This document shows, piece by piece, positions 15,774 through 45,420 of a stretch of DNA of 64,000 nt. Source of the stretch: Vitrella brassicaformis CCMP3155 (Eukaryota > Protista > Chromerida); contig CDMY01000366.1 of the NCBI GenBank assembly GCA_001179505.1, positions 248,001 through 312,000 of the forward strand, read 5' to 3'. Made by a program: the position numbers and the translations under genes. The notes below the pieces were generated by a model. The model had not been told where the DNA came from, ran no database searches, and saw only the letters and a program-made list of their open reading frames with translations. Each line of letters opens with the position of its first letter. Position 1 is the first letter of the stretch.

Positions 15774-17243
15774 ATGTTTCGTCGTCCTGATAGTCGTCCC
15801 CGCGCCCCCCTCACTCCTCCCACCCTGTCCACCCGTGCCAGCACCGCAGAAGGCTCCCCTCTGGTCACGCAGGACGTCCGCTACAGCATCAAGGAGGATG
15901 ACCATCCCGAACTGGCCAAGTGGGCCCTCTCCCGGGCCTCCCGCGGCCTCAATGCATCGCAAAAGGCCCTGCTCTTCGCCTTTCTGGCGAATGCCTTCTA
16001 CTTTGCAGTGAGTGTGGGGACGACGATATTCAACAAGGTACACATACCGCTGGGATGGGAGTGACCAACCCGAGAATGCGCACTCCACTGCACTGCCGCA
16101 TCCATCACACAAACCCTGTTCGTTCTCCTCCCTCCGTCGTGGTTGTGTGGTGTGGTGTGGTGTCTTGTATTGTGTGTGCAGGTGGTGTTGACGTCTTACC
16201 ATTTCACCCTGGTCAACGTGATGCTGCTGCTGCAGAACCTGCTGACCCTTGTGGTGCTGGTGCTGCTCAAGCAGATTGGGTGGCTGAGCTTCCCGCCCAT
16301 AACGCTAGACAGAGCCCTGGAGCTCCTGCCCCAGTCGCTATACAACTTCATTCGGATCGTCGCCGGCCTCTGGAGCCTCTCCTATCTCAACATCCCAACC
16401 AACAGCGCCTTTTTACGGGCAGGGAGCGTCGTCACGCTTATCGGAGAGTATCTGTTCCTGCGCTACGTGGCGTCGGGTCTCATCTGGGTGTCGGTGGTGG
16501 TGCAGGCCGTCGGTGCGGCCATCACCACGTGGGCCGACCTGTATCTCACTGCGATGGGCGTCTTGTACGTGTCGGTGTCCATCGTCTTCTGTGCGGCCTT
16601 CCTGGTGCAGATGAAGCGGGACCTGCAGCAGCTCGACAGACGGCGGGAGGAGACGTCCATCTCCTTCCTGCTATACCAGTCCCTCTGCTTCATCCCGCTC
16701 CTGCTGGCCTGGGGCGCCCTCTGCGGCGAGTTCACGGCCCTCCGCTCCTCAACGCTCTTCCACAGCCCCGGGTTCGTCGCCTCCTTCAGCCTTTCCCTCG
16801 TGCTGGGGGCGCTGCTGGCCTACTCAACGATCCTGGCGAACCAATTCGCCTCGCCCGTGACGGTGACGGTGACGGGCAACCTCAAGGCCCTCACCACAGA
16901 CGTGCTGGGCATCATCCTATTCCCCGACGTGGACCTGTCTTTCGGCTACCTCAGTGGGCTGGCGGTGTCCTTCTCGGGGGCATTCCTGTTTAGCTACGCC
17001 AAGATAGAGGAGAATCGGCGGAGGGACAGCTGCGGCAGCAAGCGTCGTGCAGACATAGAGGAGGGGCGCGGGAGCGCGCCCGCCACTGGCAATGGCATGA
17101 TAGATACAAACAAGGACAGAGAGAGACATGGCTCCTACTATAGCACGGGCTCCATGTGCCCCGGTAGTACCACTGTGGGGGATGAGAGCGAGGAGAGCAA
17201 CTCATCCGACGGGCTGGAGGGAGGCTGCCCCGTCCGCCCATGA
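15774..17243 (+). CDS. Nucleotide-sugar transporter (SLC35/TPT-DMT family); 2 exons
   Basis: Exons about 15774-16037 and 16182-17243, with roughly 9-10 hydrophobic helices. Motifs TTIFNKVVLTSYHF, LSYLNIPTNSAFLR, SPVTVTVTGNLK, FSGAFLFSYAK. Confidence 0.85.
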
Positions 17244-18148
17244 GCACGGAGGACAGACAGAGAGCTAGAGAGGGGGGAGGGAGGAGGGGCTTCTGATTGT
17301 ACAGCTTGCTTGCATTGGACGGTTGTGGGTGGATCCATGAGTGAGTGCATGAGTGCGGGAGAGTGAGTGCGTGTGGGTGTCTGGTCTGCCTGCGGTGGAT
17401 TGGATGGATGGATGGATGGTTGGATTGTGGATGGTTTGGACCTATCGAAGTATGCGTTCAGTCTTCCCCCTGCTGATGGCCTCCAGCAGGCCATCCATCC
17501 ATCGTATCGATCCCGAAGTTAAAACAGTTACAGGGACCAGATCATGCCACGAGTTTGTCCGTCCGTCCGGCCGTCCGTCCAACGCACCTTTTACTAACCA
17601 AAGGCACGCCACACGCCAGCATGGCATGCATCAGACAGACAGGAGAGAGAGACACACGCACCCCACCACCCCTCCCCTCACTTTCACCTCCCTCTAAGCA
17701 ACAAGAATCACCTGCCTGCACGTACAACGGGTGCGTGTGCGCCTCCCTTCCTCCCTCCCTGTGTGTGTGATGTGAAATGAAACGACCGACTGATCGATCC
17801 GACCCCCACAGCCGTGCCGTGCCGTGCTGGCCTTCTCAATCCATTTCCCGGACAGCTGAACACATGTGAAATGCGCACTGCACTGCACTCGTCAGTCAGA
17901 AAAGGGCAGCGCAGGTCAGCACAGCATAGCACGGCCAGATGGGTGTCTGTGATGTCTGTGTGTGTGTCGTCTCCACTTGTTGGCGGCTCAATACACTACA
18001 CGCTGGTCCTCTCTCCACAGCAGGCAGGCACACAAATTCAACCCTCCCTCCCACCCGCCCACACACAGGGGGATGGGATACACACACGGATGTGTTGAGG
18101 GTGAGCTCACCGCACACGGATGGCATGGATGGCCAGGCCACCCACTGA

Positions 18149-20570
18149 CTAGAGTTTTGCTTGCCAGTACTCGTCCACCGAGTCCGGACAGTTGGCGCAG
18201 TTGCTCTCGGGCTCCCACGTCGACGGCCACACTGATGGATGACACCACACCACAACCGTCCGATGGATCGATGCAACACAGCACAAAGCGTGTGATGTGA
18301 TGTGATGTGATGCATGTCGTGTGTAGTGACTCACTCACTGACCTTCTCCCTTTTTGCCTGGTTTCCACATGACGTTGAACTCGAGGTTGCCGCGGCGGTC
18401 GTACCTGTGGCCCACGATCTTGAGCACCTCCCACTCCTCGTCACCATCGCTATCCTCATCTGTGTCATGGTCCAAATCCACCACCTCCTCCTCGAGCTTG
18501 ACCTTCTTGGCCTTCTTGCGGGCTGGCGACCCCTTCCTCTTGAACCCCCCATGCTTCACCTGGGCCCGCCCACGACCACCACCACCCCTGCCGGTCTCTC
18601 GGCCCCTCTTGGTGCCCTTTTTGCTGAGCTCGAGGCTGCTGTCGCGTGAGGGCCGCTTGGCCATGCTCTTGGCTGCACCGTGCACGCCCATCTCTTGGCA
18701 TTCAGCCAGTGTCAGGTTGGTCGGGCCCAGACCACCACCACCACCACCTCTACCTTTCGACACGCGGGGGGTCCTGCCCCTGCCCCTGCCCCTGCCAAGC
18801 ACCTTGGCCCTCGACTTCGGGGTCGGGCCGGTCTTCATTCGAACCATCCGCACGATGCCCCCATCGCCGGATGAGTCGTCGTGGCCATCGTCCGCAGCCG
18901 CCTCTTCTTCTTCTGGCGCTGCCGCTGCCGCTGCTGCTGCTGCGGCGGCGGCGGCAGCGGCGTGCACGTGACGAGATGTCGCCTGTGTGGGGGTCTTGGA
19001 TGTGATGTGGAGTGTGGCGATGATGGCGTTGCCGCCGCCGGTGACGATTCTGCCGTAGGTGCGGGTGGTCTGCCGGGCCTTCTTCTCGAGCTCTCTGCGT
19101 GCTGCGGCCTGGATGGCGTCTGCCTCGTCCTGAGACTCGATGAAGGCACCCACGGGGAGGGGGGCGGCTGCACGCGGGGAGGGGGAGGGAAGGTCGTCAC
19201 GCCACACCATGCGAAGCGGGCGGTTCCGACCCTGACCAACACAGACAGCACATCATGAGCATCAATCAAGTCAGCGGATCCGTGCGCATCGCATCCCTCT
19301 CTCTGGCCTGGCTGGCTGCTCACTCACCTCGCGCATTTGGTTCTCAGCCTGGAGGAACGGCGGCCCCGTGAACAGCTCCCCGTCAATCATCCCACATATC
19401 GAAGTCCCCGCCCTGATCGACTCAGCGACCTTCTGCGCGTCCCGCTGTCCGCCCCCCAGCGCATTGCCGATGACACGCAGCCGCCCCGACTCGGTCATGC
19501 AGATGGTGGCCCCCTCGCACAGCCACACACGGCTGATGCGGTCGGGGTCGCGCCGCACGCGGACACTGACAGGCTGGAATTGTGGGTCGGGCATGTTGGA
19601 CTGCTCGGGTGGGTGTGAGGCGACGTTGTTGCTGCCGCTGCTGTCTTGGGTGTTGGGGGGGCTGGGCTGAAGGGGCAGAGGGTACAGAGAGACGCCGTAG
19701 AGCTGCTCGACCTCGCGCCGGCGGGCCTCTTCCAGCTGACGCTCGGCCGAGAATGGTGGTCTTCCTGCAGCAGAGGATTCCATCCTGCAGGCAGGCAGAC
19801 AGACAGACAGACAGATGGGCCGGGCACATTGGCAAATGATGCGTGAGCGTGGATACCCTACCCTACCCGAATCGGTCTGTGGTGGGGTTGGCGATGTGTG
19901 CGTGTTTCCACCACTCGGGGTTGGCGAGGCCATTCAGCTCATAGGACGCAGACATGTTGCCCAAGGAAAACTGCGACAGACAGACAGACAGACAGACAGA
20001 CAAAGTGCAGTCCATGGAGAAAGGGCCGGTCGGTCGATGAGGCACACGTGTGGCGCACCGTACCTCGCTGGTGAAGTGTGGTGTCCATTCGATGGGCTCG
20101 GGGATGTACTGCCGCCAAAGCTGCCGCGCCTGATGGTCGCCTGCATCAACAGACAGACAGGCCGGACGGATGGCAGGGCCGGGGCAATGGTGTTTGTTGT
20201 GTTTGTGTTGCTCACCGTACCGTTCCACTCGTATATGATGCCGTCCTTGGTGACGGCAATGCACTCGCTGCCGACAGCCGCTATGTCACGCACGAGCCGG
20301 CCAAGCCCCTCAACGAACAGCGGACCCTTCACCTGCACCGCACCCAGCAGACAGACAGACAGACAGAGCGACCAACACACACAAGCGACGTGACGTCATT
20401 GAGCTCACCCACCCCACCTGGATCATCTTGGCTTTGATCTTGCCGCTGGGGTAATGGCTGGGTGTCTTGGAGCCGCCGTCCATGTCAGGCCGCCACTGCC
20501 ACACGTGGCCATTGGCCAAGAGCACCACACCTGTGTGCGCCTTGGGGCCACACACCAACTGACACACACA

Positions 20571-20611
<41 letters not shown>

Positions 20612-22724
20612 CGAGAGCGAGAGAGAGAGAGAGAGAGACTCTAAATGCCGCCCGCCCCAAGCTTGTGTTGGTCGGTCCTTCCTCTTACCACCCCTCCCCC
20701 CACCCCGCCGACCTTCTCCGGAGGTGATGGGAACCTGCGGAAACGAATGTAGACATCTGGCCCCTTGACGAACAGCGCCATGTTGGAGTCAATCTTCTTG
20801 GGGTCCGCCTCGCTCATCCTGAGGCCCGTCCTGGGCTTGGCCAGCACCGCCATGCTCGGCTCGGTGCGGGGCGGCTCCTCGGTGATGTCGGGCATGGACA
20901 GGGAGAGGGCGAACGCCGGGACGTGCACCTCTGCGCCGCTGTCCGGTGGGCGGTGAGCGAAGGGGTTGGCGGCCATCTTGAACTCCAGGTCGGTCTTGGT
21001 GACGTGTGGCTCCGTCACGGGCTGGTCCAGGTGGCCCGAGGTGTAATGGACATCACCTGTATGGGGGAAGGACAGACAGGGGCAGAGAGTTAGAGATAGA
21101 AATAGAGAGTTGGGTCCATTCCCCGTGTGTGTGATTGTGACATTGCATACCCTTGCGTGAGATGCCGGCTATGAAGAACCTGTCGGGCATTCCTGGGGGG
21201 GCGTCGAGTGCGCTGCCTGCGATGGTTATGGTGGTGAGATCCAGCTCGCGGAAGCCCTCAATCTCCTCCCAGCAGTTGCAGCCATCGATAACGTCGTCAT
21301 GACTGTGAAGGAAAGGACAAACAGACACATCAGCATACATAGCACCCACACTTGTGTGTGAGTGGCTAAGTGGCGTCGCCTGGTGTATGCTGCGTACCTC
21401 TGGCGCCACAAGAAGACCTGGCTGGTGGACATGAGCACGGCGACGTGCCAGCGCGCCACAGCGATGTCCCGGATGCCCACTCCAGGCTGGCAGGGCAGGG
21501 AGTCAAACATGACCGTGTCTTCCAGATACACACAACCGCCCGACAGGCTCTCGTCACCCTGAAGGACAACAAACAGTACATGAGTCACACACAGGTCTGC
21601 TGTGTGTGGCCCATCTGTCTGTCTGTCTACCTGCCCCGTCTGAAGCGCAGAATGAAGCGCGTGGGTCCGAAACAGCGGGCCGCAGGCCAGGTAACGCTCA
21701 GTGACCTCTGAAGCAAGGAGCAACACACACACACACACACACACACACACCGATCCATCCATCCATCCATGTGTCCTTGTCGTACCGTCCTCCTGTTTGC
21801 GTGGCCGTCCCCGCTTCTTCTGAGGAACAGCGGCCCTCTTAGACCCCCCGGCGGGCACCAGCCGCCGCGCCTGGAGCCCACCCCCACCGCCATTCCCACC
21901 CAGCCTCATCATTCCGACGCCCATTCCCAAACCGCCCATGCCCTCGTCGAAGCCGTCGAACATCTTGAGACCCTCACGGTCGTGGGTCCCCTCATGCGTC
22001 ATGCCACCCTCCTCACTGTCACCACGACCCTCACCCCCTCCCTCTCCCTCTCGGTCTTCCTTGTCACCGCCGATGAGATCCTGCAGCCCATTGCCCCGCA
22101 CCACCTGTTGGTGTCCGTTGGCGGCGATGTTGGTCTCGTTGCCGATCGACGACGGCAGACCTTCATCGTCCACGGCCATGCCGCTGTCCTCCTCCTCCTC
22201 CTCTTCCCCTCCCCCCTGATGAATCTCATCGTCCTCCTCGTGAGTCACAGGTGGGGTGGGGAGCTGCGGTGGGCCAGCAGCGACCGCTGCTGCTGGTGGG
22301 ATGGCTGCCGCTGCAGCAGCTGCTGCTGCAGCGTTGTGAGGTGGGACTGCGTCGACGAAGGGAGGTGAGACCTCGGTGGGTGGCGACTGCTGGTCACCGC
22401 CGGAAGGGCCGATGATGCCGGGGGATGGTGCGGCAGCACCCATGCCGCTGTCACCCACGCCGTTCGCCGCCTGCAGCGACCAAAAGGCACAAAGAGCAAG
22501 TCAGTCACGTGTCTGGTGCGCACGTGTCTGTCATCATCTCTCCCCACCTGCATGCCATTGGCTGCATTGCCATCGCCTTGGTCGTCTGTGTCGTGGCCTG
22601 CCGCATCGCCATTCATCTGGGGTGCGTCGTCGTCCATGCCGGCCGCCGCAGCTGCCACGGCATCGGACTCGTCGTGTGGCTTGTTGCCGGCTGCAGATCT
22701 CGTCGGATGGGCGTCGCTATCCAT
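18149..22724 (-). CDS. RCC1-like repeat + chromodomain protein with AT-hook, paralogue A; multi-exon, 5' end uncertain
   Basis: RCC1-like blades IRDIAVARWHVAVLMSTSQVFLW, LVCGPKAHTGVVLLANGHVWQW, VRDIAAVGSECIAVTKDGIIYEW. AT-hook KKRGRPRK. Spliced chromodomain EEWEVLKIVGHRYDRRGNLEFNVMWK...TWEPESNCANCPDSVDEYW. Confidence 0.7.
20562..20638. repeat. Compound (CA)n(GA)n intronic microsatellite, representative of many in the window
   Basis: Read directly. Similar (GT)n, (CAGA)n and (CATC)n tracts lie in most introns. Confidence 0.95.
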
Positions 22725-23024
22725 CTCGGTCAGATCAACCTGGTACAACGAGCAGACGGGACGATGCGCATGCTACAGAAGGGCGACTGAAGGACGCTAC
22801 TCTTCCTGCCCCCTCGATAGATGCGAGCTTGTGGACGGATCGCGAGCAGAATGCGAGGAAACCTGGTTGCAGCCGCCGTACCCTGACGCGCCGTGCTGGT
22901 CACTCATTAGCCGGTTCCGCGAGTTGACTCTTGCAGCTGTGGTGTGGGAGATCCCTCTCGTCTATATCATTCGGGTGCTGAGGGTGCCCCCCCAGCGTCG
23001 ACGCCCATCGCATGCTAAGCAGCC

Positions 23025-26000
23025 ATGAATCCCTCGGACGAGGACAGGCCGTTGCCGCCGCCACCGCCACCGCGTCCGGTGGTAACTCTGAGGATGCCTC
23101 CTCGGTCTTCCATACTGCTGCGTCAGTCCACACAGCGCCCGCCGCCGCCGCATCTGCCGCTATCGGGAGCAGCAGCAGCTCCTGGCGCACCTGTGGTCAT
23201 CCCTCCAGTGCCCGTGCGGCCCCCATTGGCAACAGGATCACCACCCCGTGACTTCGGGCCGGCCGGGAGGGTAACTATCGTGCAGCAGGGCAGGCCGACC
23301 ATCGCCACCAGTGCACCTGCCGGTGGGGGTGGTGTGTATTGTGCACCGGCACCCCCTCCCCCACCCCCACCACCGCGTGTGACGCCCGGGATGCGACCTG
23401 GTGGGACACTTAGGTCGGCGGGAGGGTACGGCGGGCGGCCACGGGGTCGCCCACCATCGGTTGTGGCCTGGGTGAGGCCGCCGACGACCCCTCACCCACC
23501 GACACCACCAGTCATCTCGCTGGTGGCAAGACCGTCCCCACCGCCCAAGAGCCGTGCCGGCCCGCAGGCTGCTGCTGGTGCTGGCGTGGAGTTTATGGAT
23601 CGGATGGATACTGTGGATCTGACCCAGGAGGAGAAGGAGGATGAGGAGACGCAGGAGGCTCCACCAGGTGGGTATCTGTCTATCTGTCTGTGTCCATGGC
23701 ATAGGGACGGAAGGAGGGGGAACGGGTGGATGGTGGTGTGCGTTGACGGACGTCTTGTGTTGTGTTGGTTTGGTGTGTCGGTCAGAGGTGGGGGAGGAGT
23801 ATTTGGGTTACGGGCCGTTGTTCCAGGCCGCCAAGAAGGGCGCCGCCACGGGCAACCTCCGGCTGCTAGACGATGACTTAGAGGAGGCGGGCAGCACCGA
23901 GGCCACGAGCGCAAAGTTGGGACAGGTGGGCGGGGCGGGCTGACCCAACCAACACAAACACACCTCTGCACTCATGTTATCGTTGGTGGTCTCTCTTCTT
24001 TGTAAGGGTTTGTTGCTTCACGATTCGCCAATATCGTCGCTGCCGTCCAACGGTGGTCTGGTGCAGGACGTGGCGGTGGCGAGATGGCACATAGCCGTCC
24101 TGCTGGCCGACGGCCGGGTGCTGTTGTGGAGGCAGAGGTAATCACAGCACAGCAACTCCAACGCACTCATTGCTCGGCCGCTGTGCCATGAATGCAGCCA
24201 CCATGGTGTGTCAACGGGTTGCGACACGTGGGAGGAGATCCCGGCCTTCCGCAAGCTCGACATCGCATCGCTGCACCTCGCCGGCTCGTGCATGCGCGAC
24301 GACTGGCGACAGGCCGACCCTGCTGCCATCGCTGATCGGCAAAAGGACACCCTGCTCATCCAGCCCCGCCCCCCCGACAGGTTCTTCCTGGCGGCGCTGA
24401 CCAAGGACGGGCAGCTTCATTGGGTCAGGGGCGACGAGCAGCGGTGTCGGCTGCCTGCGTGGGAGCTGCACCAGACCTACTTCACCTTCAAGCACGACGG
24501 CCATGTGGTGCAGAACGGCGCCACCACCGCCAGCATGGGGGAGATCTGCCACGAGCCGCCTCCCGCCGAGCCGTCCATGGCGGTCATTGCCGTCCCGCGG
24601 GTGGCGGCGCTGCCTGCGCGCATCCAGGGGGAGGTGGAGGTCACGCCCTGCTTGTTCATCAAGGGCCCACACACATTCATCAGATTCAAAAAGTTCCCTG
24701 CAAAGCCGACCAAGGTCTGGTGGACACGCCGGGAGACAGGGAGGGAGGGAGGGAGGGGCTGTATGTGTGTTCCTTTCTGTCTGTGTGATGTCAGGTTGTG
24801 TGTGGCCCTGCGGCCGGGGGCGGGGCGGTGCTGCTGGAGAACGGCTCTCTCTGGCGGTGGACCATTAACGCCGAAACCCGCAAGGCAACGATAGACCAGG
24901 TAGGTAAACCAGGCAATGACCCCTCCACTGTGTCTGCAAGGCTTATGTCTCTGTGTGTGTTGTGCTGTGTGCGCCCTGGTGTGGTGACTGCTGGCCTGGC
25001 AGTTGCTCGGCTCGCTAAGGGGGAAGAAGGTGCTGGATGTGGCCGAGTGCTGCGGCGACTACGTGGCCGTGACTGACGACGGCATAGTGCACGAGTGGAA
25101 CACGCGGGTCGACGGCGTCCCCTTGTCGTCGAGGCTGCGGCCACACATTCCCCTTCCAGTCGAGTGGACACCCACCTTCCAACTCAAGGTACCTCAGCCT
25201 CAGCCCAGCCCCACACACACGCAAGAACACATCGGCATAGATAGGAAAGATAGATGGGCGGGCAGGCGATGGGCCCTTCGCACTCTCCTTGTTCGTTCCG
25301 TCTGTCATGTCAGGTGATGAGCGAGTCCCTCAGGCACCCCGACACGCCAAGCACGCTCGCATGGTGGCAGCAGGACCAGCAGCCCGCCCCCCCACCACCA
25401 CTCCCTCACCCAGAAGCATCAGCGGCGTCAGCCTCACCCGAGCAGGCACACCCCACCGTGCCGCCGCCGCCAACCGACGAGGAGCTGGAGGCCATGAGGC
25501 GGGCGGAGATCGAGGCCCAGTACGACGTCCGCCTGGCCAACCCACTCAAACCGGCCGGGAGCAATGGCGATGGTGACGGCGATGGCGATGAGGAGCTGGA
25601 GATCATCATGGAGACGCCGGGGCTGCCTGCGGGGCCTGTGCGTGTGGAGGCGGCCGCAGAGGACCCCGTGACGTCCATCTGGCTCATGGAGGGGGCCACC
25701 ATCGGCGTGCATAAGAGCGGCCGGTTCGCGGCCTGGGCAAACGCAGTGGCCTGGTGGCGATCCGGCGTCTGGGCGCCCGCTGCACCCGACACAAGCTTCG
25801 GCTTCAGCCTGGCCAGCGAGATTGCGACTCATCCCAACTACATGGTGAGTGCAGGGCGGGAGACAACCGAGAAGACAGAGTCTCTCCTGTTTGTTCGTCT
25901 GACTGCAATACGCCTGTGTGTCTGTGTGTCGTTGTGGTTGTTGGGTTCATCTCATCGCTCAGACGTGGTCAGAGGTGCTGCGGTCGTCCCCCTGGCTGCA

Positions 26001-27268
26001 TTACGAGGCCAAGGCGCGCGAGGCGCACAAGCTGCCGTCCATGGCCGAGCAGGAGGCGTCGGGCGCCCTGCCGTCGTCATGGGACAAAAAGGCCCTCGAG
26101 CGCAAGATAGGCCACCTCATGCACACGGCCGCCCAGTCCCCTTTCCCCGTCGGCCGCATCATCGCATCGCCCACCAACCTCATCATTGCACGAGTCGTCA
26201 TCGGCCCCATCCAGCCTGGCAGAAGGGTGGTCCCCGACCCAGAGGGCCCCAGTAGTAGCAGGCCCCCCTACTACCCCAGCCCCCTGAAGCGCGCCGAGGC
26301 CAGCGTGTTCCAGCTGCCGGTCGCGGCCAAGGCAAGGGCGGAGGCCGGCAACCCGCGTATGAGGAAGTTTCGCGGCAAGCAGCACTCCCCCATGCTGACG
26401 AGGAAACGAGAAGAGCTTCCCAACTCATTTACTTGTCCTGACGTGGGCACGGGGATGGGCACCATCGAGCTGGGCGACGTCGAGGAGGCCGAGGGGGCGG
26501 CTGGCGTGTGGGGGCTGGACGGTGGGGTCCACGATAGGCAGCGGCGTGCTGCAGGTGGTGGAGGTCTTGTGGAGGTTGAGATGGGCGACGAGCTGGAGGG
26601 AGGAGATTCGCACGCGACACTGACTGGCGGGGAGAGGGACGAGAGCAGCGACGTGAAGCGCAGGAGGGTGCAGGGCGGCAAGGGCGGGGAGGGGGGAGGG
26701 AACGAAGAGCAGGAGGAGGCCGAGGAAGACGATGACAAACACGACGGACGTAAGTGAGTGAGTGAGAGGAGTGGGTGGTCAGTCGCATCAACGAACACTC
26801 CCACCCATACCGCACCACCTACCTGTTTTGGTGTTCATCCTTCATCCATTCATCCATCCATTCATCCATCCATCGATCCATGCATCAGGTGAGTACGAGG
26901 TGTCTCGGATCCTGGCGCACCGCCAGCCGACGCCACAGAAACGCGAGTACCTCATCCAGTGGAAAGGTCAGTCTGCCACCGCACCAGACAGACCCCTGAA
27001 GCGCGACGACAGACAATACTCCCTGGTTGCCTTGCTGTGGTGTGTGTGTGTGTGTGTGTGCGCAGATTACCGCGAGACTTGGGAGCCTGAGTCGTCTCTG
27101 ACCAACTGCCACGGGAAGCTGGAGGAGTACTGGCGGGCCACCCCCCCGGAGCTGCTGCAGTACCGGAGCCGTCCGCCGTCCCTGGCCCAGGTCACTCCCA
27201 CAGCGGCGGCGGCCATAATGCAGCAGAGGCGGGTCAAAGGCAGCGGACCTTCCTTCTTGCGCCAATAG
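23025..27268 (+). CDS. RCC1-like repeat + chromodomain protein, paralogue B; multi-exon
   Basis: Blades VQDVAVARWHIAVLLADGRVLLW, VVCGPAAGGGAVLLENGSLWRW, VLDVAECCGDYVAVTDDGIVHEW, VTSIWLMEGATIGVHKSGRF. N-terminal RPRGRPP. Spliced chromodomain GEYEVSRILAHRQPTPQKREYLIQWK|DYRETWEPESSLTNCHGKLEEYW. Confidence 0.75.
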
Positions 27269-28692
27269 CTAGCTAGCATGGGTGGATAGCATACCATTGA
27301 TTGCCCCGACTGACTGACTGTATGGCCGATGGATGGATGGATGGATGTACAGTGACTGTTTACTGGGCAAGTGTTGGCCTGGTTGTTACTTTTTCTGCTG
27401 GCTGGTTGCACGTCACGATCATCAATCGTTCCTGTCAGGGTGCCTCTCTCCTCTCGTCTCTCTCACCGCGTATGTATGCTATGGTATGTATGGATGCATC
27501 GCCGTGTCGGTCGGCAGGGGCGGGCAGCGTGCGTGAGAGAGCGTAGAAGGCAGCGTGCGTGAGCGGCTTATACGCTCTCTCACGAGCGCTGCACGTCCAT
27601 GTTGAGACACATGTTGATGCATCACACCATGATGATCTGTAGGTGTCGCGTGGTCAGTCCACCCCTCACTGCATGTAAGCCGAGGGATGGATGGTAGCAT
27701 AGCTTGATGACGTGCTTTGCGAAGGGATGGCTCAATCGGTGGATTGAGTGGATGCATGGCTGGCTGCTCGCGTGGCTCGATCCATGCACTGACTGCACAG
27801 GACACGAACGAGTGCAGCTAGTGCGATGCCTGCCTGATTGACGACCGACGACACAGACCCGTCTCATCCATCCATATGTGTGTATGTTAAGGATTATTGG
27901 TTTGAGGTGAGGTGAAAGCCAAACCTTCAGGTGTCCGTCCGTATGTCGCACAAATGCACTCACTCACTTACACACATAGAGACGACACATACAACCACAC
28001 AACATACACTACGGTGCGACCTGAAAGGGCCATTAAATGTTGCTGCTCATTTCACAGACCACGGACGGTGCCCCCATGAGATGCATGTGACTGATGCTCG
28101 ATCAGCATTCCCCACCGATCCCTCCCTCCCTCCCTCACACACACACACACACACACACATACACACACCACCCCCACCACGAGGCCCCCGCCCGCTGCAC
28201 GTGTGTTGCTCCTGATGCAAACGAAGAGCTGTGTGTGATGAATGCAGCCAGTGCTTTGATGAAATGTGATTGATGGTGGATCGAATCGATGGATCGATCA
28301 TATACACACACACACATGGCACATGCCCTGCCCGCCAGGGTACACAACACACCAGGCAGACAGACAGACATGCACACACCCACACAGACAGACAGACAGA
28401 CGGACAACAAACTCACGCCGACAGGACGATGGATGGGGTGAGGTGAGACGAGAAGATGAGAAGACGAGAAGGTGACAAGGTGAGAAGATGAGAATATGGG
28501 CAGGCAGGCAATGAGGCCAAGAACGAACGAACGAGCAAGCAGGAATGCGACAAAGGACCAAACTGGTCAGCGGTCCGTCCATCCGTCCTTCCTTATACAC
28601 AGGACCAAAAACGACCTGGCGTTAAGCAATAAACAATCCGATATATCCGCACTCACTCTTCTATCCCCCTCCCTCCCCCCCCCCCCCCCCCC

Positions 28693-28992
28693 NNNNNNNN
28701 NNNNNNNNNNNNNNNNNNNNNNNNNNNNNNNNNNNNNNNNNNNNNNNNNNNNNNNNNNNNNNNNNNNNNNNNNNNNNNNNNNNNNNNNNNNNNNNNNNNN
28801 NNNNNNNNNNNNNNNNNNNNNNNNNNNNNNNNNNNNNNNNNNNNNNNNNNNNNNNNNNNNNNNNNNNNNNNNNNNNNNNNNNNNNNNNNNNNNNNNNNNN
28901 NNNNNNNNNNNNNNNNNNNNNNNNNNNNNNNNNNNNNNNNNNNNNNNNNNNNNNNNNNNNNNNNNNNNNNNNNNNNNNNNNNNNNNNNNNNN
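28693..28992. other. Assembly gap (300 N) flanked by poly-C on both sides
   Basis: Run of N between homopolymeric C tracts. Confidence 0.99.
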
Positions 28993-29049
28993 CCCCCCCC
29001 CCCCCCCCTGTCCTGTCCCCTCCCGCTCCGCCACTCCCTATGATGTCCG

Positions 29050-32000
29050 TCACGTAGTTGGGCATTTCAGCCGGATGACAAAAGGCCAGCCATCCTCCTC
29101 ACTGTCGAGTGTCTCGGTGGTCTGCTTCATCGGCATCCGGAACCCTTCTCCACAGCTGAGCACCGTGTCAGCCCCATCCTCAGGAGTGAAAACATAGCCG
29201 TCGAATCCCTCCTCGATGGCGTAGTAGTAGATCCAGGGGCTGGGGGTCGGCGAGGCATCCATCTCCTCCCGTGTTTGTGGGTTGGTGAGGTAATAGCACC
29301 TGTCAGGCAGGAAGCTCATCGCCGGGATGTCGCACCACTTCTCCCAGCCCCCGTGGGTGAGCGGGGACTGGAAGTAGACGGCGATGCGCTTCTTGACGCC
29401 CGGCGAGCACTCGTCCAGGATGCAGATCTGCTTGCAGGGCTTCATGTCCTTGCTCTCCTTCCCAATGAGATCGGGGCACTCTTTGCCACCGTGTAGCGGC
29501 TTCACCTGGTGAGAAAGGAGATGGGGATCCAGGCAGGGGGAAAGAAGTGAAGTGCGTGTGGGCGTCCGTGCTGTGTGTGTGAGGGTGACCTTGATGGTTC
29601 TGTGTCTGGATCGCTCTGATGGGCCGCATCTGTGGCTCCAGTCGCCCCATTCACTCCAGCTCGACACCTCACAATCGACAGCTGACGGACGGACCAATAC
29701 GCAACACGCAGACGCGGACAGATAAATGACTGACGATGGGAATGAACGGCCTTGAGTTGATCTTACGGCAAGGCACTTCGTGGCATGGTTTGATCTCTAT
29801 GAGCTCCTCAGCCTTACAGTCCTTCCCGCCGCCACTGGCCTTCCACTGCACACACGCACACACACACGTATATATACATATATACACTTGCAAAACGTGA
29901 TAGCCCACACCCACCCTCCCCTCCGTCCCTGACCTTGACAGGTCTCGTTCTGTTTCTGCTGCCGCCCTCGCACGGCTTGGAGCAGTTCCAGTCCTCCCAC
30001 TCGCCTGGCAGGCAGTCCCCCTTGCAGACGGGGGGCCATGGGTCGCCCCTCTTGGCCCCCACCTGCCGCCACTTGCCGTCTGGCAGGCAGACGGCCTCGG
30101 TCGCACCCGTGAAGGTGTAGTGGTCGGAGGGGCAGGACAAGAGGTGGTGGCGGAAGGTGCCGAAGAAATACGGCGACAGGTCAGACTTGTTGCTGGTGGC
30201 GAGCTGCAGCACCGAGGGGTTGGGGTCTTTCGGGAAGGCGCACACATCTGGCAAGACATCACACCACACACCGAAGGACGTAAAGATGAGGGTTGCTTGC
30301 ATGGGGGATATGCTCTGTCTGTCTCCCTGTCTCTCTCTCTCTTGGTCTCTCACTTTTGCGTATCTCGTAGCAGTCTATCTTCAGCTGTTCCGCGCCGATG
30401 ACGGCCATGCTGTTGGGCTCGCTGAGGTTCTTGGCCCTCCATCCGCCCCCCAGCAGCCCCCACTCCTCCAGCCCGCCCTCGCCATCGGCCACCATCTCAG
30501 GTGCATCTCTGTAGGCCTTGAAAGGGACGCCGCACCGCACAGCAGACGAGAGACGTGACGATGAGAGCCGCCACTGCCGCGTGAGGGCGCAGTATGAGAG
30601 GTAGAGGCGGCGAGAGGGGCTGCGGACGGTCATGAGGCGGTTGCGATGGAACCCCAGGTTGATCTGCACCCACACCTGGTGGGCCACGCCATTGACAGAC
30701 ACCAACCAGGAAACAAAGAAAGAGTAGTGATTGATGCGATGCATGTAGGGTCTCACACACGCACACAATCGGCCGGGTAGGGCACGTGTCAGTCATGTCT
30801 GCGTACCGGCCGTTGCCCGGCGAAGACGACAGTAGTGGGATCTGCAGATGATGCGTTTCTTCTTGCCGCCTCACTGGCCCCCCAGTGGCCGTCCATGGCC
30901 TCCACCGCCCTGGCTGCAGACTCATCCAGCATGGCGTACCAGCCAGACACGTCCAGTCGGCCAATGTACGGCAGCGCACCCGACACGGCGCCATGCACGT
31001 GGAGGTAGTGGCACTCGCTGAGTTTGTCGTCTGGGAGGGGGGCCGGGATGGGGTCTATCGAGGCCGCCTTCAACGTCGTGGGATCGGGGACGCCGTCTGA
31101 TTGATGTGAGAACAAGATGACAACAATGGATTGCATGTACGGCTGGCTATCGTGCGTCCGTATGTGGTTCGGCTCGTGTGTGCAACGTACTGCAATCTCC
31201 TGCGTCCTTGTTGCACGCCTTGGCTTCATAGCACGCCGGGTCGCAGACTCCGTCCCCGACCCAGGCACGCATACAACCAGGCGCACACTCTGAGGGAGGG
31301 AAGGGCAACAAACACAACGGAGGAATGCATCGCACCAAAGTGTCACCGATGGATGGATGGATGCATCACAGCGTGCCGTGCCGTGCCGTACCGCTGAGGC
31401 AGCTCTCGGCGGCCTTGCAAGGTTCTGGTTCCTTCTGGATGACGCACACGTCGTTGTCGGCACGCTGATTGATTGACATCGATCCGATCAACAGATTGCC
31501 AGCCACGTGAGCGAGAGATGTTATGTTGCGTGGGGGTTGGGTTCTTGCTTTCCTCTTGGCTTACTGACTAGCTGACCTTTCTGATAGTTGCAGTTGTGCG
31601 CCATCTCGTGCCATCCCCACAGAAGGCGTCGCACTGCGTCACGTTGTCCTTCTTGGTCTCGCAGATCTCGGGCACCGAAGTACTCCCGTCCACTGCAGAC
31701 AGAGGTGACGGATATGTGACACACGACAGACACCGAGACAGCCAGCCTCATTGGATTGGATTGGCTCCATCCACCCTGTGACCCACACACCCATGTGCTT
31801 ACGTAGCTCCCATCTTGGTCTGGCGGCTCTGCCTGCAACACAGGAAGTAAGTCACAGTTGTTGACATCAAGAATCAAGCACAGTGAGTGAAGGGCCAGTA
31901 CAGTACAGCAGATGAGTTGAGTGAGGGCACAGCACAGCACACGTACCGCAGTCGCCATCGTCGTTGTCACATTGGTCTGAGACGAAGCACTCCGGGTCGC

Positions 32001-41302: not shown

Positions 41303-44300
41303 CTAGAGAGGTCGGTCACTGCCTCCTGTGCGTGACGTGGTTCTTAATGTGTGGTTGTTGTGCTGAGGCGTGCCGATGGGAAACAGTTCCGGCCCGACCA
41401 CGGGGTGGGCCGCCTCTTCGGCAGCCCGCTCCTCCTTCTCGGCCTCACCAGCGTCATACATACGGTCCTACACACACGCACACATATGGATGGATGGATG
41501 GGCACACAGCCAGATAGATGGGCATGGTCGGCTAGTGGTGTGTACCAGAGGTTTGATTTTGATGTCTGCGTATGGCTGTTCTTGTTTGACGTCGATGAAG
41601 CCCTTGGTTCTGAGCACCAGCAGCTCGAAGAACCCTCGGGCCACCTGATCGACCGATGCAACAGCACAGGTGTGCAGCAAGTGTGCTGCTGTGTGCTGGG
41701 GTGCTCGCTGCCCGACTGACCGTTTCGCGATTCATGCCCTTGCAGACTTTCTTGAATGAGAGGTCGCCGTCCTTAGCCTTGCTCTTGTCGGCCATCTCCT
41801 TCAGATACATCATCATCTGACCCACCACACACAGCACAGAGCAAAATCGACCACATGTTTGCATTCTCATTACGCGTGCGTGTGTCGGTTTCTTACACAC
41901 CTTGGTGGTGTTTCTGGAGTATCCGATGAAGTTCTGCTGCTGGCTGTTTTGCTGCTCCGACTCGCGGCGCTCCAACACACCCTCCGGCCCCTGACGCAAC
42001 ACATCAGCTAATCCACCACCATCACCTACTGCAAAAGCACCAACAAGCAACAACAAGCACATGAAAGGACGGGCGGACGGACGTCTGCTTGGTGGCATTT
42101 ATAACACACTCACCGTGGTCCTCCGGGTCTGATGGCTGTCCGTCCATCTCCTCCTCGTTGCGGCCAGGAGGGGCGGGAGGGGCCGCCGCGGCAGCAGCAG
42201 CGTCACCATCAGCTTCAGGCTCAACACCTGGACACATACATGACAGACAGACAAGGGGAGAAGAATGCAACCTAAAGCTGCTTGGCTTGCTGTGCGGATA
42301 ATGCTGCCGCTATGTTATTTACCGTTCTGCATCGGCTCCTCCTGGTCCTCATGCTCACTGCAGACAGCAGAGAGGACCACAACCACGAGAGCACCTTTCG
42401 GTCTGCGTGCGTGTGTGTTGCATGTTGTGTGTTGTGTTTTGTGCCTACCGCAGGTCCTCCAGTCCGGCGGGCATGAAGTCGCCCAGGTCTATGTCCTCCG
42501 CGCCCTTCATGTCCATCTCGTCGTCCAGCGGCTCCTCCTTGGCCGCACCGCCTGACGGGATGTAGCCCTCCAAACGACGCCTACATGAAACACACACACG
42601 CACAACAAAGACACACGGATACAGGGGGTGTGTAGGTGTGTGAGGTGATGTGATGTGATGTGGTCTGGTGGCCTGTGTGTACTTCTGTCCTGCGTTGATG
42701 CGTTTCAGGAGCCTCGTCAAACGCTTGCCCAAACCTGAACGGCAGGCACAGACGGACCGAAATATGAGCATGCGGGCAGTCGTGTCCATCGCCCCCCTGT
42801 GTGTCTCACTGATCTCCATCATGTGACGTGCTGACCGTGTATGTGTACGGGTATGGGTGGCATGAGGTCGGGGTCGATGGGGTAGGGCGGGTAGCTCCGG
42901 TCCAGGATGTCGTCACGGTTCTGTATCCAGTCCTCCGTCACGCTGCCCACGCACAGACGGACATCACACACACGAGGGGTGCAGAGCGAGCGTGTGCATG
43001 TGTGTGTGTGGTTTGCGCACGTACGCTTGGGTCAGCATCGTGGTGGAGTCGACTTTGGTGGGCTTGTGGCGGTCGACTTTGGTGGGCTTGTCGCGGCCGC
43101 CTCCCTTCTGCTTCTGCTTAGCCGCGCCGCCCTCAGCCACAACATCGCCGTCACTACACACACCACACACAGCACCAAGTGTTCTCTTCTCCCTCTCTCT
43201 CCCTCTGCCCATGATAGGGTGTGCTGTGCTGTGCGTACACTTCTTCATCCTGGTCTAGTCCCAGATCCTTCCAGAACTCGGGCTCGTTCTCGAGGGGCGG
43301 AGGCGAGTCGTCCAGACCACCATACATGTCCGCACCGTCGAGGTCGGGCGGCGCCATGTCCTGGAAGCCATCCTGGTTGGCCGACATGGGAGGCAGCTCG
43401 CCATCGCCTTCGCCGCGACCAGCAGGAGACTGAACACATGGGAAGCACACATGGGTTGACCGTGTGGTGTTCTTCGTGTGTGGTGTGGTGTGGTGTGGTG
43501 TGGTGTACCCTGCGATGTGCGGTGGATCCGGGAGGGGCCTCTGAGGGCGCGCCTTCCCCTACGTCGCCAAACACATCCGCATCCTGACACCGACACACAC
43601 AAGAGAACACGGATCAGAGGATGGCCCATCGTTCTGGGTGAAGTCTTTGGCTGGCGTCACGTCACCTGCAGGTCCTGCGCGGCCGCAGCTGCAGCAGCCG
43701 CCTCGCCACGAGGACGCTCTATGTCTATGTCCATCTGTATGTACATATTGATAGACACACATGACCAATACGCAGTTCATTTGGTCTTCTCATCTGGCTT
43801 ACGGCGTTGTCACCCTCCCCTCCGATGCCCTCCTGCCCTCCGCCTTCGCCGCTACCGCCACCACCACTCGCACCGTCGAGCACCTGACCAAAGCACCGAA
43901 GGGATCCATGCATGCTGCGTGTTGTGTTGCATTGTCCCATCTTGCCCACCCACCCACCGGTCCTGCATCGGGTGCTGGGGGTGATTCGCCCCCCTCTGGC
44001 TCTCCAGCAGGGGCGGCATCTGCGTCTGCATCCGCATGTGCGGCAGGCGCGGGCGAAGGTGTGCGGGGGGCGGGAGCAGCGTCCAGGTCTCCCAGTCCAT
44101 CCAAGTCACCACCCATTCCGAACTCGAAACCACCAATGTCGTCAACACCCATACCACCATCCTCAAACTCATCTGAGCACCGCAAGGTAGGTAAAGCGGG
44201 GGGTCAGGTGCGTCCATGTCTGTGTGTGTGTGTGTGTGTGTGGTCCGGTCCTCACTCCTGGGCAGCATGTTCATGTCGTCTAGGCCGCCCAGCAAGTTGT

Positions 44301-45178
44301 CGTTGGCCTGGTCCGCCAGAGCGATGTTCGCACGCTGACCACCACTGAACCATCACCAACCACACAGACGAGAACACCGCATAACCACCACAGAACACAC
44401 AGCGGGGGCATTGTGCGTGGTGGTGGTGTTGTGACTACCGTGTGGCCGGTGTGGGTAGATTGGGCTGGTCGGGCACGTCCTCGAACACGTCCTCGCCGTC
44501 GAAGGGCTGCGTAGGGCCACCCAAATCCGGACCACCAATCGCACTGACACGCACACCAGACAGACACAAGACATCCATCCATCAATCTTCCGCAGCGATG
44601 GTGTGTGCTCTGTCTGTTGCTGGCTGTGCGCACTCACCGCATCTCATCGTCTTGCTCTTGCTGTCGCGACGTGGCATCCTTACGGCCGCGCTTCTCGCCA
44701 TCCTTGTCGCCGCGAGACTCGTATTGCTGACACACACCAAACACACACGATGGCCAAGAAACACCATGTGATGAGTGGAGAGGGCGGGTCAGATGACGCA
44801 GTCAGTCACCTACCTGGTTGAGCTTGTGGAGCATGTCGATGCACTCCTGAGAGGAGAGGAGGCAAATGCATAGATCCGCACAGACGCAGTCATCCTCCGC
44901 CTGTTTCCTCTCCCCCCTTCATTCGATTTGCCATTGTGAATGCGTACCGCTTCGTGGTAGACCGTTTTTGCGAGGAAGAGCCTGGATACGCCGATGAGTG
45001 CGCTGCTGGTGAGTCTGAGGCTGCTGGACACGCCGGAGGGGTCGCTGAGGAGCTCCTCGATGGCGAGTCCGATGTCGACATCCTGCACCTCGCGCTTCTT
45101 GAGCTTCTTGTCCGACTGGAACGCCGCCACCCACACCGGCGTCAGCGACTTGTTGCTCGTGAAGTTCAACGAGTTCAT
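41303..45178 (-). CDS. RAD21: Rad21/Rec8-family alpha-kleisin cohesin subunit; multi-exon
   Basis: N-terminal KSLTPVWVAAF..KKLKKREVQDVDI...SLRLTSSALIGVSRLFLAKTVY. C-terminal winged helix RETVSRGFFELLVLRTKGFIDVKQEQPYADIKI. Acidic/Pro-rich centre. RAD21 versus REC8 is not resolved. Confidence 0.85.
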
Positions 45179-45420
45179 GACGGTCACTGACGCTGATGCG
45201 ATGGCTGGCTATCAAAGAGGGGTGCAACCAACAAAGTGATGGAAAATGTCTGGCGCCCCTCGCTCAGCCCATCCTTTCGTGCGCGTCAGACGCGAGGGGA
45301 AAAGCGATCGTTTTGGCTCGGTTTGACGTTTCTGGCTCGCATTCTCCTCGCAAACGCCTCCATCCTTCCTCCTCGTGCCGTCAGCGCACGCCTGCCTTCC
45401 CTGTCATCTCATTTGTTGCA

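What the first reader, a model, noticed from the sequence alone, without database searches (positions are those of the whole stretch)
18149..27268. Inverted head-to-head paralogue pair encoding AT-hook/SIM + RCC1-like repeats + chromodomain
Seen: two divergently transcribed genes share collinear blocks. Examples (A / B): EVTERYLACGPLF / EVGEEYLGYGPLF; DIAVARWHVAVL..FLWRQ / DVAVARWHIAVL..LLWRQ, with an intron at the same phase-2 position; GCNCWEEIEGFRELD / GCDTWEEIPAFRKLD; PDRFFIAG / PDRFFLAA; LFVKGPDVYIRFRRFP / LFIKGPHTFIRFKKFP; IPEPIEWTPHF / IPLPVEWTPTF; RRREVEQLY / RRAEIEAQY; VWLCEGAT / IWLMEGAT. Both end in a chromodomain. Both also carry RGRP cores (KKRGRPRK; RPRGRPP) and VDLT motifs next to acidic residues. 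Established: RCC1 propellers, chromodomains, AT-hooks and V/I-D-L-T SUMO-interacting motifs are all chromatin-associated modules. Inference: this is an old inverted duplication of a lineage-specific chromatin reader or scaffold family, with a domain combination I do not recognise.
Basis: partly seen in the sequence, partly recalled or inferred. Interest (0 to 1): 0.75.

Follow-up and report, generated by a model that had tools for sequence, protein, structure and literature searches.

The report
Chromerid propeller-plus-chromodomain gene pair
Two neighbouring, oppositely oriented genes of the alga Vitrella brassicaformis belong to a small family, found so far only in chromerid algae, whose proteins join a very divergent RCC1-like beta-propeller to a histone-mark-reading chromodomain; this is an undescribed combination of known chromatin modules, not a new kind of system.

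Summary
The window is Vitrella brassicaformis CCMP3155.

- **Gene B** (+, 23025-27268) has 10 exons and matches the deposited protein CEM06427.1 (1106 aa).
- **Gene A** (-, 22724-18149) is my hand model: 13 GT-AG exons, open frame, 1152 aa.
- **Shared features:** about ten collinear blocks (tblastn E down to 9e-14), six clearly shared intron positions and phases, and a C-terminal chromodomain. B's domain is CDY/HP1-like with an intact aromatic cage.

1. The pair is not isolated. Vitrella has at least two more unlinked copies (contigs C938 and C403), and Chromera velia has two (Cvel_21445, Cvel_586). B is at least as similar to the C938 copy as to A.
2. A's VDLT lies upstream of its first ATG. 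A SIM is not a family feature, whereas RGRP (AT-hook) cores recur in five of six genes.
3. The RCC1-like propeller is only moderately supported.
   - **For:** a better AF2 model has core pLDDT 70-96. All 50 top structural matches are beta-propellers, with RCC1-like domains first. HERC2 RLD1 matches by sequence at E 4.6e-5.
   - **Against:** no Pfam threshold is met and hhalign is not significant.

No relatives were found outside chromerids, but the searches had limited sensitivity. The likely role is a multivalent chromatin scaffold; this is inferred, not shown.

The parts
18149..22724 (-). Gene A, hand-built model: 13 exons, 3459 nt CDS, 1152 aa. Exons: 22724-22548, 22470-21786, 21707-21631, 21558-21398, 21302-21151, 21056-20713, 20558-20418, 20332-20221, 20140-20064, 19970-19867, 19784-19328, 19231-18343, 18231-18149 (stop included).
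   Evidence: All junctions are GT-AG, the frame stays open across every junction, and there are no internal stops. Exon order is collinear with B and with the Chromera proteins. The 5' end is uncertain. The joined protein was never handed to a tool.
23025..27268 (+). Gene B = CEM06427.1 / A0A0G4F3C7 (P0001, 1106 aa), 10 exons: 23025-23667, 23786-23925, 24007-24137, 24198-24714, 24795-24899, 25003-25188, 25314-25844, 25963-26749, 26889-26966, 27066-27268.
   Evidence: Each exon's in-frame translation is an exact substring of P0001 and the total is 1106 codons plus stop.
22725..23024 (.). 300-bp spacer between the two start codons; presumed shared bidirectional promoter.
   Evidence: Coordinates; GC 0.61. 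An 11-nt perfect inverted repeat sits at 22706-22716 and 22999-23009. Promoter function is inferred only.
18989..21707 (-). Gene A propeller-like core (exons 3-12): N-terminal Y-L-x-x-G-P-L-F motif plus seven blade-like beta units with insertions.
   Evidence: Blocks are homologous to P0001 215-835 and to P0002 and P0003. The fold is inferred by homology to the modelled B and Chromera proteins.
23786..26217 (+). Gene B propeller-like core (P0001 about 215-835).
   Evidence: AF2 model 2 has pLDDT 70-96 over about residues 270-550. Foldseek's top hits are RCC1-like domains, E 1e-7. VIA gives Z 8.9-9.4 with RCC1-like domains first. phmmer finds HERC2 RLD1 at E 4.6e-5.
18343..18436 (-). Gene A chromodomain, N-terminal half (end of exon 12, same exon as the last blade).
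   Evidence: Pfam Chromo positions 1-24, 16.4 bits. The continuous ORF links blade 7 to the chromodomain.
18152..18231 (-). Gene A chromodomain, C-terminal half (exon 13); the protein ends 3 residues later.
   Evidence: Pfam Chromo positions 31-52, 23.4 bits, E 5.6e-5. Matches B 27074-27139 at E 2e-6.
26889..26966 (+). Gene B chromodomain, N-terminal half (exon 9).
   Evidence: Pfam Chromo 37.5 bits against a cut-off of 25.1 on P0001 1016-1063. Aligned to CDYL and CDYL2.
27066..27139 (+). Gene B chromodomain, C-terminal half (start of exon 10). The phase-1 intron is at the same position as in A, 4 residues before TWEPE.
21796..21819 (-). Gene A AT-hook-like motif KKRGRPRK (end of exon 2).
   Evidence: Pfam AT_hook E 0.046, 14 bits, below the 17.4 cut-off. 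Motif seen.
23436..23456 (+). Gene B RGRP core (RPRGRPP) in the proline-rich N-terminal region.
   Evidence: P0001 residues 138-144. No Pfam hit, and it could arise by chance in this composition.
23613..23657 (+). Gene B VDLT followed by an acidic run (P0001 197-211); SIM-like motif at the end of exon 1.
   Evidence: Motif-level only.
22728..22739 (-). VDLT codons upstream of gene A's first ATG (in frame, after a stop 17 codons up).
   Evidence: Not coding in my model unless there is an unseen upstream exon or non-AUG initiation.

Best explanation
The region holds two intact, intron-rich, divergently oriented nuclear genes of Vitrella brassicaformis. They are members of a small gene family known so far only from chromerids: at least four copies in Vitrella and at least two in Chromera velia.

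Each protein has four parts:
1. A disordered N-terminal region, often with an RGRP (AT-hook-type) core.
2. A very divergent beta-propeller of about seven blades, best matched by RCC1-like domains. It is opened by a conserved Y-L-G-Y-G-P-L-F type motif and interrupted by long disordered or helical inserts.
3. A charged linker.
4. A C-terminal CDY/HP1-type chromodomain with its three aromatic cage positions occupied.

The most likely mode of action is a multivalent chromatin-bound scaffold. The chromodomain docks on a methylated lysine of a histone tail. The AT-hook and RG stretches add low-specificity DNA contact. The propeller offers a surface for a partner protein or for the nucleosome face, as in RCC1.

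Shown: the gene structures, the paralogy, the shared introns, the chromodomain and the family distribution.
Inferred: the propeller subtype, the binding specificities, nuclear localisation and co-regulation from the 300-bp spacer.
For: - **Organism and gene B identity:**
- **Gene A model:** open, GT-AG.
- **Collinear homology:**; one exon alone reaches E 1.3e-10 in the whole genome.
- **Shared introns:** phase 1 before E-V-x-E, phase 0 after G-Q, phase 2 after LWRQ, phase 0 before x-VCGP, phase 0 before blade 5, phase 0 after EWTP-x5, phase 1 inside the chromodomain.
- **Chromodomain:** above the Pfam cut-off in B and in Cvel_21445. The family profile hits CDY, HP1 and Rhino chains down to E 1e-8. 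B aligns to CDYL with Y, W and Y at the cage positions.
- **Same architecture elsewhere:** Cvel_21445 and Cvel_586 and two further Vitrella loci.
- **Propeller:** AF2 of B has core pLDDT 70-96. RCC1-like domains fill nearly all top ranks of Foldseek for both models. A Foldseek-independent search returns only beta-propellers in the top 50, with RCC1L first at Z 8.9. VIA gives Z 12.5 on the Chromera model. ESM Atlas nearest clusters are all RCC1_2/RCC1, score 0.95. HERC2 RLD1 matches by sequence at E 4.6e-5. RCC1_2 scores 21.5 bits against a cut-off of 22.
- **RGRP cores:** in 5 of 6 genes.
- **One transcript:** in A, the last blade and the first half of the chromodomain lie in one continuous 889-nt exon, so the two modules are on one transcript.
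Against: - No RCC1-type Pfam model reaches its gathering score in any member.
- The WD40_RLD model finds 70 exons in this genome at E 1e-5 but none in the four family loci.
- hhalign of the family profile against a canonical Vitrella RCC1-like domain gives only one 24-column blade match, E 0.12.
- Both AF2 models have low overall confidence (mean pLDDT 32 and 47). Blades 6 and 7 are poorly modelled, TM-scores to solved RCC1-like domains are about 0.25-0.38, and WD40 propellers are within 1 Z unit.
- No expression, localisation or binding data were available.
- Gene A's annotated protein was not retrieved from any database. Its model, especially the 5' end, is mine alone.
Confidence: 0.6

Rival explanations
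1. The repeat core is a beta-propeller of another or a new subtype (WD40-like or an orphan propeller), not an RCC1-like domain. The RCC1 resemblance would be only the generic 'hydrophobic strand, G, x, x, H, strand, D-G, strand, W' blade pattern.
For: WD40, YWTD and designed propellers lie within 1 Z unit of the RCC1-like domains. hhalign against a canonical RCC1-like domain is not significant. No Pfam RCC1 threshold is met.
Against: In Foldseek, RCC1-like domains take almost all top ranks in two separate models, although WD40 chains are far more numerous in the PDB. All sub-threshold sequence hits point to RCC1-type families and none to WD40. The ESM Atlas neighbours are all RCC1.
Confidence: 0.2
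2. A and B are not products of a local inverted duplication. The family diversified earlier, and the head-to-head adjacency either is ancestral with later dispersal of copies, or arose by rearrangement.
For: B against the unlinked C938 copy scores 303 bits at 44% identity. B against A scores 220 bits at 34%. Block identities among all six genes lie between 42 and 61%, with no clear A-B sister signal. DNA similarity between A and B is nearly gone.
Against: Adjacency of two members of a four-member family in a 72.7 Mb genome is unlikely by chance. Per exon, A is closer to B than to either Chromera protein.
Confidence: 0.4
3. Gene A is a decaying or non-functional duplicate, and only B is a working gene.
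For: No database protein for A was returned by any search. Its VDLT is stranded upstream of the first ATG. Its chromodomain has a 6-residue insertion between cage positions 2 and 3.
Against: There are 13 exons with canonical splice sites and an uninterrupted 1152-codon frame. The blade motifs and aromatic cage positions are conserved despite an old divergence. Records from the window's own genome may simply be withheld by the tools (notes).
Confidence: 0.07

Closest known systems
CDY / CDYL and HP1-type chromodomain readers (Pfam PF00385)
   Same: The C-terminal domain matches Chromo above threshold. It aligns with CDYL, CDYL2, HP1, Rhino and MPP8 chains (E down to 1e-8 with the family profile) and keeps aromatic residues at the three cage positions.
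   Different: It is a single chromodomain at the extreme C-terminus of a protein of about 1100 aa. There is no chromoshadow, enoyl-CoA hydratase-like or SET domain. The loop before TWEPE is shorter than in HP1, and copy A has an insertion between cage positions 2 and 3.
RCC1-like domain (RLD) proteins: RCC1/Prp20, UVR8, HERC1/2 RLDs, RPGR, RCC1L (WBSCR16)
   Same: These are the best fold matches for both AF2 models. The proteins have about seven blades carrying the RCC1-style blade motif. HERC2 RLD1 matches by sequence at E 4.6e-5. RCC1 itself is a nucleosome-binding propeller, so a chromatin role is plausible.
   Different: No Pfam RCC1 model passes its threshold and the G-Q-L-G type signature is missing. 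Blades are separated by inserts of 50-110 residues. hhalign is not significant. There is no evidence for Ran binding or GEF activity. None of the RLD partner-domain combinations I recall (HECT, BTB, FYVE/PH; from memory, not checked in InterPro) includes a chromodomain, and the paper searches returned none that do.
AT-hook proteins (HMGA type, PF02178)
   Same: Copy A (KKRGRPRK), Cvel_21445 (GRGRPRK) and the C403 copy (a cluster of RGRP cores) have textbook core-plus-basic-flank motifs in disordered regions.
   Different: All are below the Pfam cut-off. The position is not conserved between family members. B's core lacks basic flanks, and Cvel_586 has none.

Membership tests
Chromodomain (PF00385) | Pfam Chromo model at or above the gathering score (25.1 bits) | tested here: met
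   B scores 37.5 bits on P0001 and 40.7 bits on the read-through ORF 26762-27268. Cvel_21445 scores 27.8 bits.
Chromodomain (PF00385) | Three-residue aromatic cage (HP1 Y24/W45/Y48 equivalents; numbering from memory) | tested here: met
   In the HMMER alignment of B to CDYL, Y1016, W1038 and Y1041 align with the Y, W and Y of CDYL. For A (W, W, W), Cvel_21445 (W, W, F) and Cvel_586 (W, W, W) the positions were read by eye from alignments A3, which is inference.
Chromodomain (PF00385) | Binding of methyl-lysine histone peptides | not testable with these tools
   Needs peptide arrays or ITC.
RCC1-like domain (PF00415 / PF13540 / PF25390) | A Pfam RCC1-type model at or above the gathering score | tested here: not met
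   The best hit is RCC1_2 at 21.5 bits against a cut-off of 22 in Cvel_21445. WD40_RLD reaches E 0.25 (B exon 3) and E 0.024 (C403 blade). A genome scan with PF25390 at 1e-5 misses all four family loci.
RCC1-like domain (PF00415 / PF13540 / PF25390) | Significant sequence or profile similarity to solved or canonical RCC1-like domains | tested here: inconclusive
   P0001 against the PDB finds HERC2 RLD1 at full-sequence E 4.6e-5, but no single stretch passes. The family profile gives E 0.13. hhalign against a Vitrella RCC1-like domain gives E 0.12 over 24 columns only.
RCC1-like domain (PF00415 / PF13540 / PF25390) | Seven-bladed beta-propeller fold with RCC1 topology | tested here: inconclusive
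   Propeller-class matches are consistent and RCC1-like domains rank first. However, Z is only 8.9-12.5 with WD40 propellers tied, TM is about 0.25-0.38, and blades 6-7 have low confidence.
RCC1-like domain (PF00415 / PF13540 / PF25390) | Ran binding or nucleotide-exchange activity, or nucleosome binding | not testable with these tools
   Biochemical assay needed.
AT-hook (PF02178) | Pfam AT_hook at or above 17.4 bits, meaning an R-G-R-P core with basic flanks | tested here: not met
   A scores 14 bits, E 0.046. No hit was reported for B, Cvel_21445 or Cvel_586. The core motif is nevertheless present in 5 of 6 genes.
SUMO-interacting motif (V/I-D-L-T type) | Hydrophobic core flanked by acidic residues, within the translated protein and conserved among relatives | tested here: not met
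   Present and coding only in B (residues 197-200 plus an acidic run). In A it lies before the first ATG. It is absent from Cvel_21445. Only loosely similar motifs occur elsewhere. SUMO binding itself is not testable here.

The most novel reading that the evidence does not exclude
Chromerids evolved their own class of chromatin factor: a nucleosome-docking RCC1-type propeller tethered to methylated histone tails by a chromodomain and to DNA by AT-hooks. It diversified into paralogues, two of which are co-expressed from a 300-bp bidirectional promoter and may act as a heteromer. Such a family could mark or organise heterochromatin, or locally control a Ran-like GTPase on chromatin, in the photosynthetic relatives of apicomplexan parasites. 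It would have been lost, or diverged beyond recognition, in the parasites.
Probability: 0.2. Interest if true: 0.6.

Novelty: new variant of a known kind. Interest (0 to 1): 0.4.

Why it matters
Chromerids are the closest photosynthetic relatives of apicomplexan parasites, and their chromatin machinery is almost unstudied. A lineage-restricted family that fuses a methyl-lysine reader to an RCC1-like propeller would be a new reader architecture. RCC1 is the one propeller class known to sit on the nucleosome face. The family offers a handle on how heterochromatin or nuclear organisation works in this group, and on what was lost on the way to parasitism. The proteins are already in public databases, but only as uncharacterised 'Chromo domain-containing protein'. 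The gain here is therefore annotation and a hypothesis, not a new principle.

Tried and rejected
1. **Exhaustive phmmer search.** B's 173-aa exon 4 against 1.84 billion representatives gave only B and Cvel_21445. This query also missed the in-genome paralogues C938 and C403, so its silence outside chromerids is weak evidence.
2. **Three word-index searches.** The family profile, Cvel_21445 core and B core gave only Chromera proteins or self.
3. **JGI metagenome scan.** Two conserved peptide patterns gave 93 pattern hits, none confirmed.
4. **The look-up of encoding contigs** for B, Cvel_21445 and Cvel_586 found nothing on record. Chromera synteny could not be checked. The gene numbers 586 and 21445 merely suggest different scaffolds.
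5. **MAFFT with exon fragments.** Several fragments were scattered onto the wrong blades. Only well-placed fragments were kept for the second AF2 run.
6. **hhalign against a canonical RCC1-like domain** was not significant.
7. **Block-wise identity matrix** for the six genes was too noisy for a phylogeny.
8. **Rfam** found nothing in the window. Earlier scan notes nearby concern other genes.
9. I redid it with coordinates only.
10. The spliced protein of gene A was never assembled or handed to any tool. A was searched exon by exon by reference. No full-length Pfam scan, fold or tree exists for A.
Full report
**Where we are.** The window is contig C366:248001-312000 of a 72.7 Mb, 1064-contig assembly. 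The protein encoded on the plus strand at 23025-27268 is letter for letter CEM06427.1 / A0A0G4F3C7 of Vitrella brassicaformis CCMP3155. Its sources name it only 'Chromo domain-containing protein'. The sequence is GC-rich (about 0.6) and full of short GT-AG introns. Rfam finds nothing in the window. Earlier notes of this scan near the region concern unrelated genes.

**The observation.** I translated stop-to-stop pieces of the minus strand of 17501-22900 and compared them with the plus strand of 22901-28000.
- About ten blocks match in strictly collinear order, with E-values from 9e-14 to 0.003.
- One B exon searched in six frames over the whole genome finds only itself and gene A (E 1.3e-10).
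- At DNA level, only short codon blocks of 73-84% identity remain. The two copies are therefore old, and there has been no recent gene conversion.

**Gene models.** For B, each of ten exons translates to an exact substring of the deposited 1106-aa protein. For A, I built a model by hand from the homology blocks and the splice signals.
- It has thirteen exons, all GT-AG.
- The frame is open across every junction.
- The CDS is 3459 nt, giving 1152 aa, with the stop at 18149-18151.

A was searched exon by exon by reference, so there is no full-length Pfam scan, fold or tree for A. No database protein for A was returned by any search.

**Shared introns.** Six of B's nine introns clearly have a counterpart in A at the same place and phase:

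| Position | Phase |
|---|---|
| Before the E-V-x-E-x-Y-L motif | 1 |
| After G-Q | 0 |
| Before x-V-C-G-P | 0 |
| Before the fifth blade | 0 |
| Inside the chromodomain, four residues before TWEPE | 1 |

Two further phase-0 introns probably correspond: the one after the E-W-T-P segment, and the one after the sixth blade, which lies in a weakly aligned region. A has four extra introns and B has one extra. The copying was therefore at DNA level, followed by intron gain or loss.

**The 5' end of A and the SIM claim.** The first ATG of A is at 22724. A stop lies 17 codons further up, with no ATG in between. Unless there is an unseen upstream exon or non-AUG initiation, that motif is leader, not protein. 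An AG directly precedes the V codon, so an acceptor there is conceivable.

B's V-D-L-T plus acidic run is coding (residues 197-211). A scan of all six family genes shows no conserved SIM, only loosely similar motifs. I treat the SIM as unsupported.

**AT-hooks.** RGRP cores occur in five of the six genes:
- A has K-K-R-G-R-P-R-K.
- Cvel_21445 has G-R-G-R-P-R-K near its C-terminus.
- The C403 copy has a cluster of them.
- B and the C938 copy have weaker ones.

They sit at different positions in different members. Pfam's AT_hook reaches only 14 bits in A, against a cut-off of 17.4. This looks like a recurrent but positionally free feature of the disordered regions.

**The chromodomain.** It is above the Pfam threshold in B and in Cvel_21445. 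In A it is split into two sub-threshold halves by the intron. A three-sequence family profile hits CDY, CDYL, HP1, Rhino, Swi6 and MPP8 chains down to E 1e-8.

In the HMMER alignment of B to CDYL, the three aromatic cage positions are Y, W and Y. By eye, the other members keep W/W/W or W/W/F. A has a six-residue insertion between positions 2 and 3. A methyl-lysine reader is the natural inference, but it is untested.

**The family.**
- The exhaustive search with B's exon 4 returned, besides B, only Chromera velia Cvel_21445. This is a 1039-aa protein that aligns with B over 600 residues (E 4e-53) and has the same architecture.
- A profile word search added a second Chromera paralogue, Cvel_586, 1136 aa.
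- A profile search of the Vitrella genome found two further loci with the same collinear blocks, including the chromodomain: C938 at about 145.2-149.2 kb and C403 at about 42.3-45.4 kb.

The 'pair' is therefore two of at least four Vitrella genes.

Crude pairwise tallies give B against C938 303 bits at 44% identity, and B against A 220 bits at 34%. A is roughly equidistant from everything. The two Chromera genes are each other's best match. I cannot say that A and B are sister copies. Adjacency argues for a local origin, while the similarity scores do not.

Nothing was found outside chromerids. However, the exhaustive query also failed to report the in-genome paralogues, so sensitivity was limited.

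**The propeller question.**

Against an RCC1-like domain:
- No RCC1-type Pfam model passes its threshold. The best is RCC1_2 at 21.5 against 22 bits in Cvel_21445; WD40_RLD reaches E 0.25 and 0.024 on single blades.
- The WD40_RLD model finds 70 canonical exons in this genome but none in the family loci.
- hhalign of the family profile against a canonical Vitrella RCC1-like domain matches one blade only, E 0.12.

For it:
- phmmer of B against PDB sequences gives HERC2 RLD1 at full-sequence E 4.6e-5.
- The ESM Atlas neighbours of the Chromera core are all RCC1_2/RCC1 clusters, score 0.95 with 184 of 256 features shared.
- The first AF2 model (Cvel_21445, three sequences) was poor, with mean pLDDT 32. 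Foldseek nevertheless ranked UVR8, HERC2, HERC1, RPGR, RCC1L and RCC1 first at E about 1e-7. VIA gave Z up to 12.5 over about 230-250 residues, tied with WD40 propellers.
- The second model (B, with well-placed exon fragments of A, C938 and C403 added to the alignment) has pLDDT 70-96 over residues 270-550.
- For that model, Foldseek again puts RCC1-like domains in nearly all top 30 places, including the RCC1-nucleosome complex. VIA ranks RCC1-like domains first at Z 8.9-9.4.
- A Foldseek-independent scan of 48,161 chains returns only beta-propellers in its top 50, with RCC1L first.

TM-scores are low (about 0.25-0.38) and blades 6 and 7 are weakly modelled. My reading:

| Claim | Probability |
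|---|---|
| The core is a beta-propeller | about 0.8 |
| The propeller is RCC1-like | about 0.6 |

It would be a very divergent member, with 50-110-residue inserts between blades.

**One protein or two?** In A, the last blade-like hairpin and the first half of the chromodomain lie in one uninterrupted 889-nt exon. In B, exon 8 runs open from the last blade to just before the chromodomain. The fusion recurs in both Chromera gene models and in all four Vitrella loci.

**How it most likely works.** The parts are a methyl-lysine-reading chromodomain, AT-hook and RG stretches, basic clusters that look like nuclear targeting signals, and a propeller of the class whose founding member binds the nucleosome face. 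Together they add up to a multivalent chromatin-bound scaffold. Only the domain identities rest on tool results here. Every binding step is inference.

The 300-bp spacer between the two start codons suggests a shared bidirectional promoter and co-expression. It carries an 11-nt perfect inverted repeat at its two edges, which I did not follow up.

**Novelty.** Three full-text paper searches turned up no description of a propeller-plus-chromodomain family in chromerids or other alveolates. The modules are all known, and the proteins are already deposited, though uncharacterised. I rate this a new variant of a known kind, of moderate interest.

Noticed in passing
window 22706-22716 and 22999-23009: An 11-nt perfect inverted repeat brackets the A/B spacer. 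One arm lies inside A's first codons and the other 16-26 nt upstream of B's ATG. About 0.07 such pairs are expected by chance in the 751 nt scanned. It could be a promoter element or a relic of the duplication.
   Followed up: no
G000:C938:~145200-149200 (L003:4200-8170) and G000:C403:~42250-45400 (L004:4250-7400): Two further unlinked members of the same propeller-plus-chromodomain family in the Vitrella genome. The C403 copy has a cluster of four to five RGRP (AT-hook) cores in one open piece.
   Followed up: partly
G000:C366:400716-402468 (same contig, outside the window): A canonical RCC1-like-domain gene (WD40_RLD exon hits, E 5e-24 to 2e-12) lies about 90 kb beyond the end of the window, some 125 kb downstream of the A/B pair. 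It is unrelated to the family at sequence level.
   Followed up: no
window 22728-22739 (-): An in-frame V-D-L-T-E directly precedes gene A's first ATG, and an AG dinucleotide sits just before the V codon. This hints that A's true 5' end may include an upstream exon, or that the start codon shifted after duplication.
   Followed up: partly
window ~28650-29100: A run of N (600 in the window) marks an assembly gap just downstream of gene B.
   Followed up: no
window 16143-17243 (+): A 366-codon open frame with a multi-pass hydrophobic, transporter-like look lies upstream of gene A's 3' end. It has no Pfam match at E 0.001 when read as one piece, and probably contains introns.
   Followed up: partly
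window, many introns (e.g. 20560-20640, 21720-21760, 27040-27065): Introns of both genes are rich in (GT)n, (CT)n and CAGA-type microsatellites. Read in frame, these give the C-V-C-V and Q-T-D-R strings that produce spurious similarity between ORFs.
   Followed up: no
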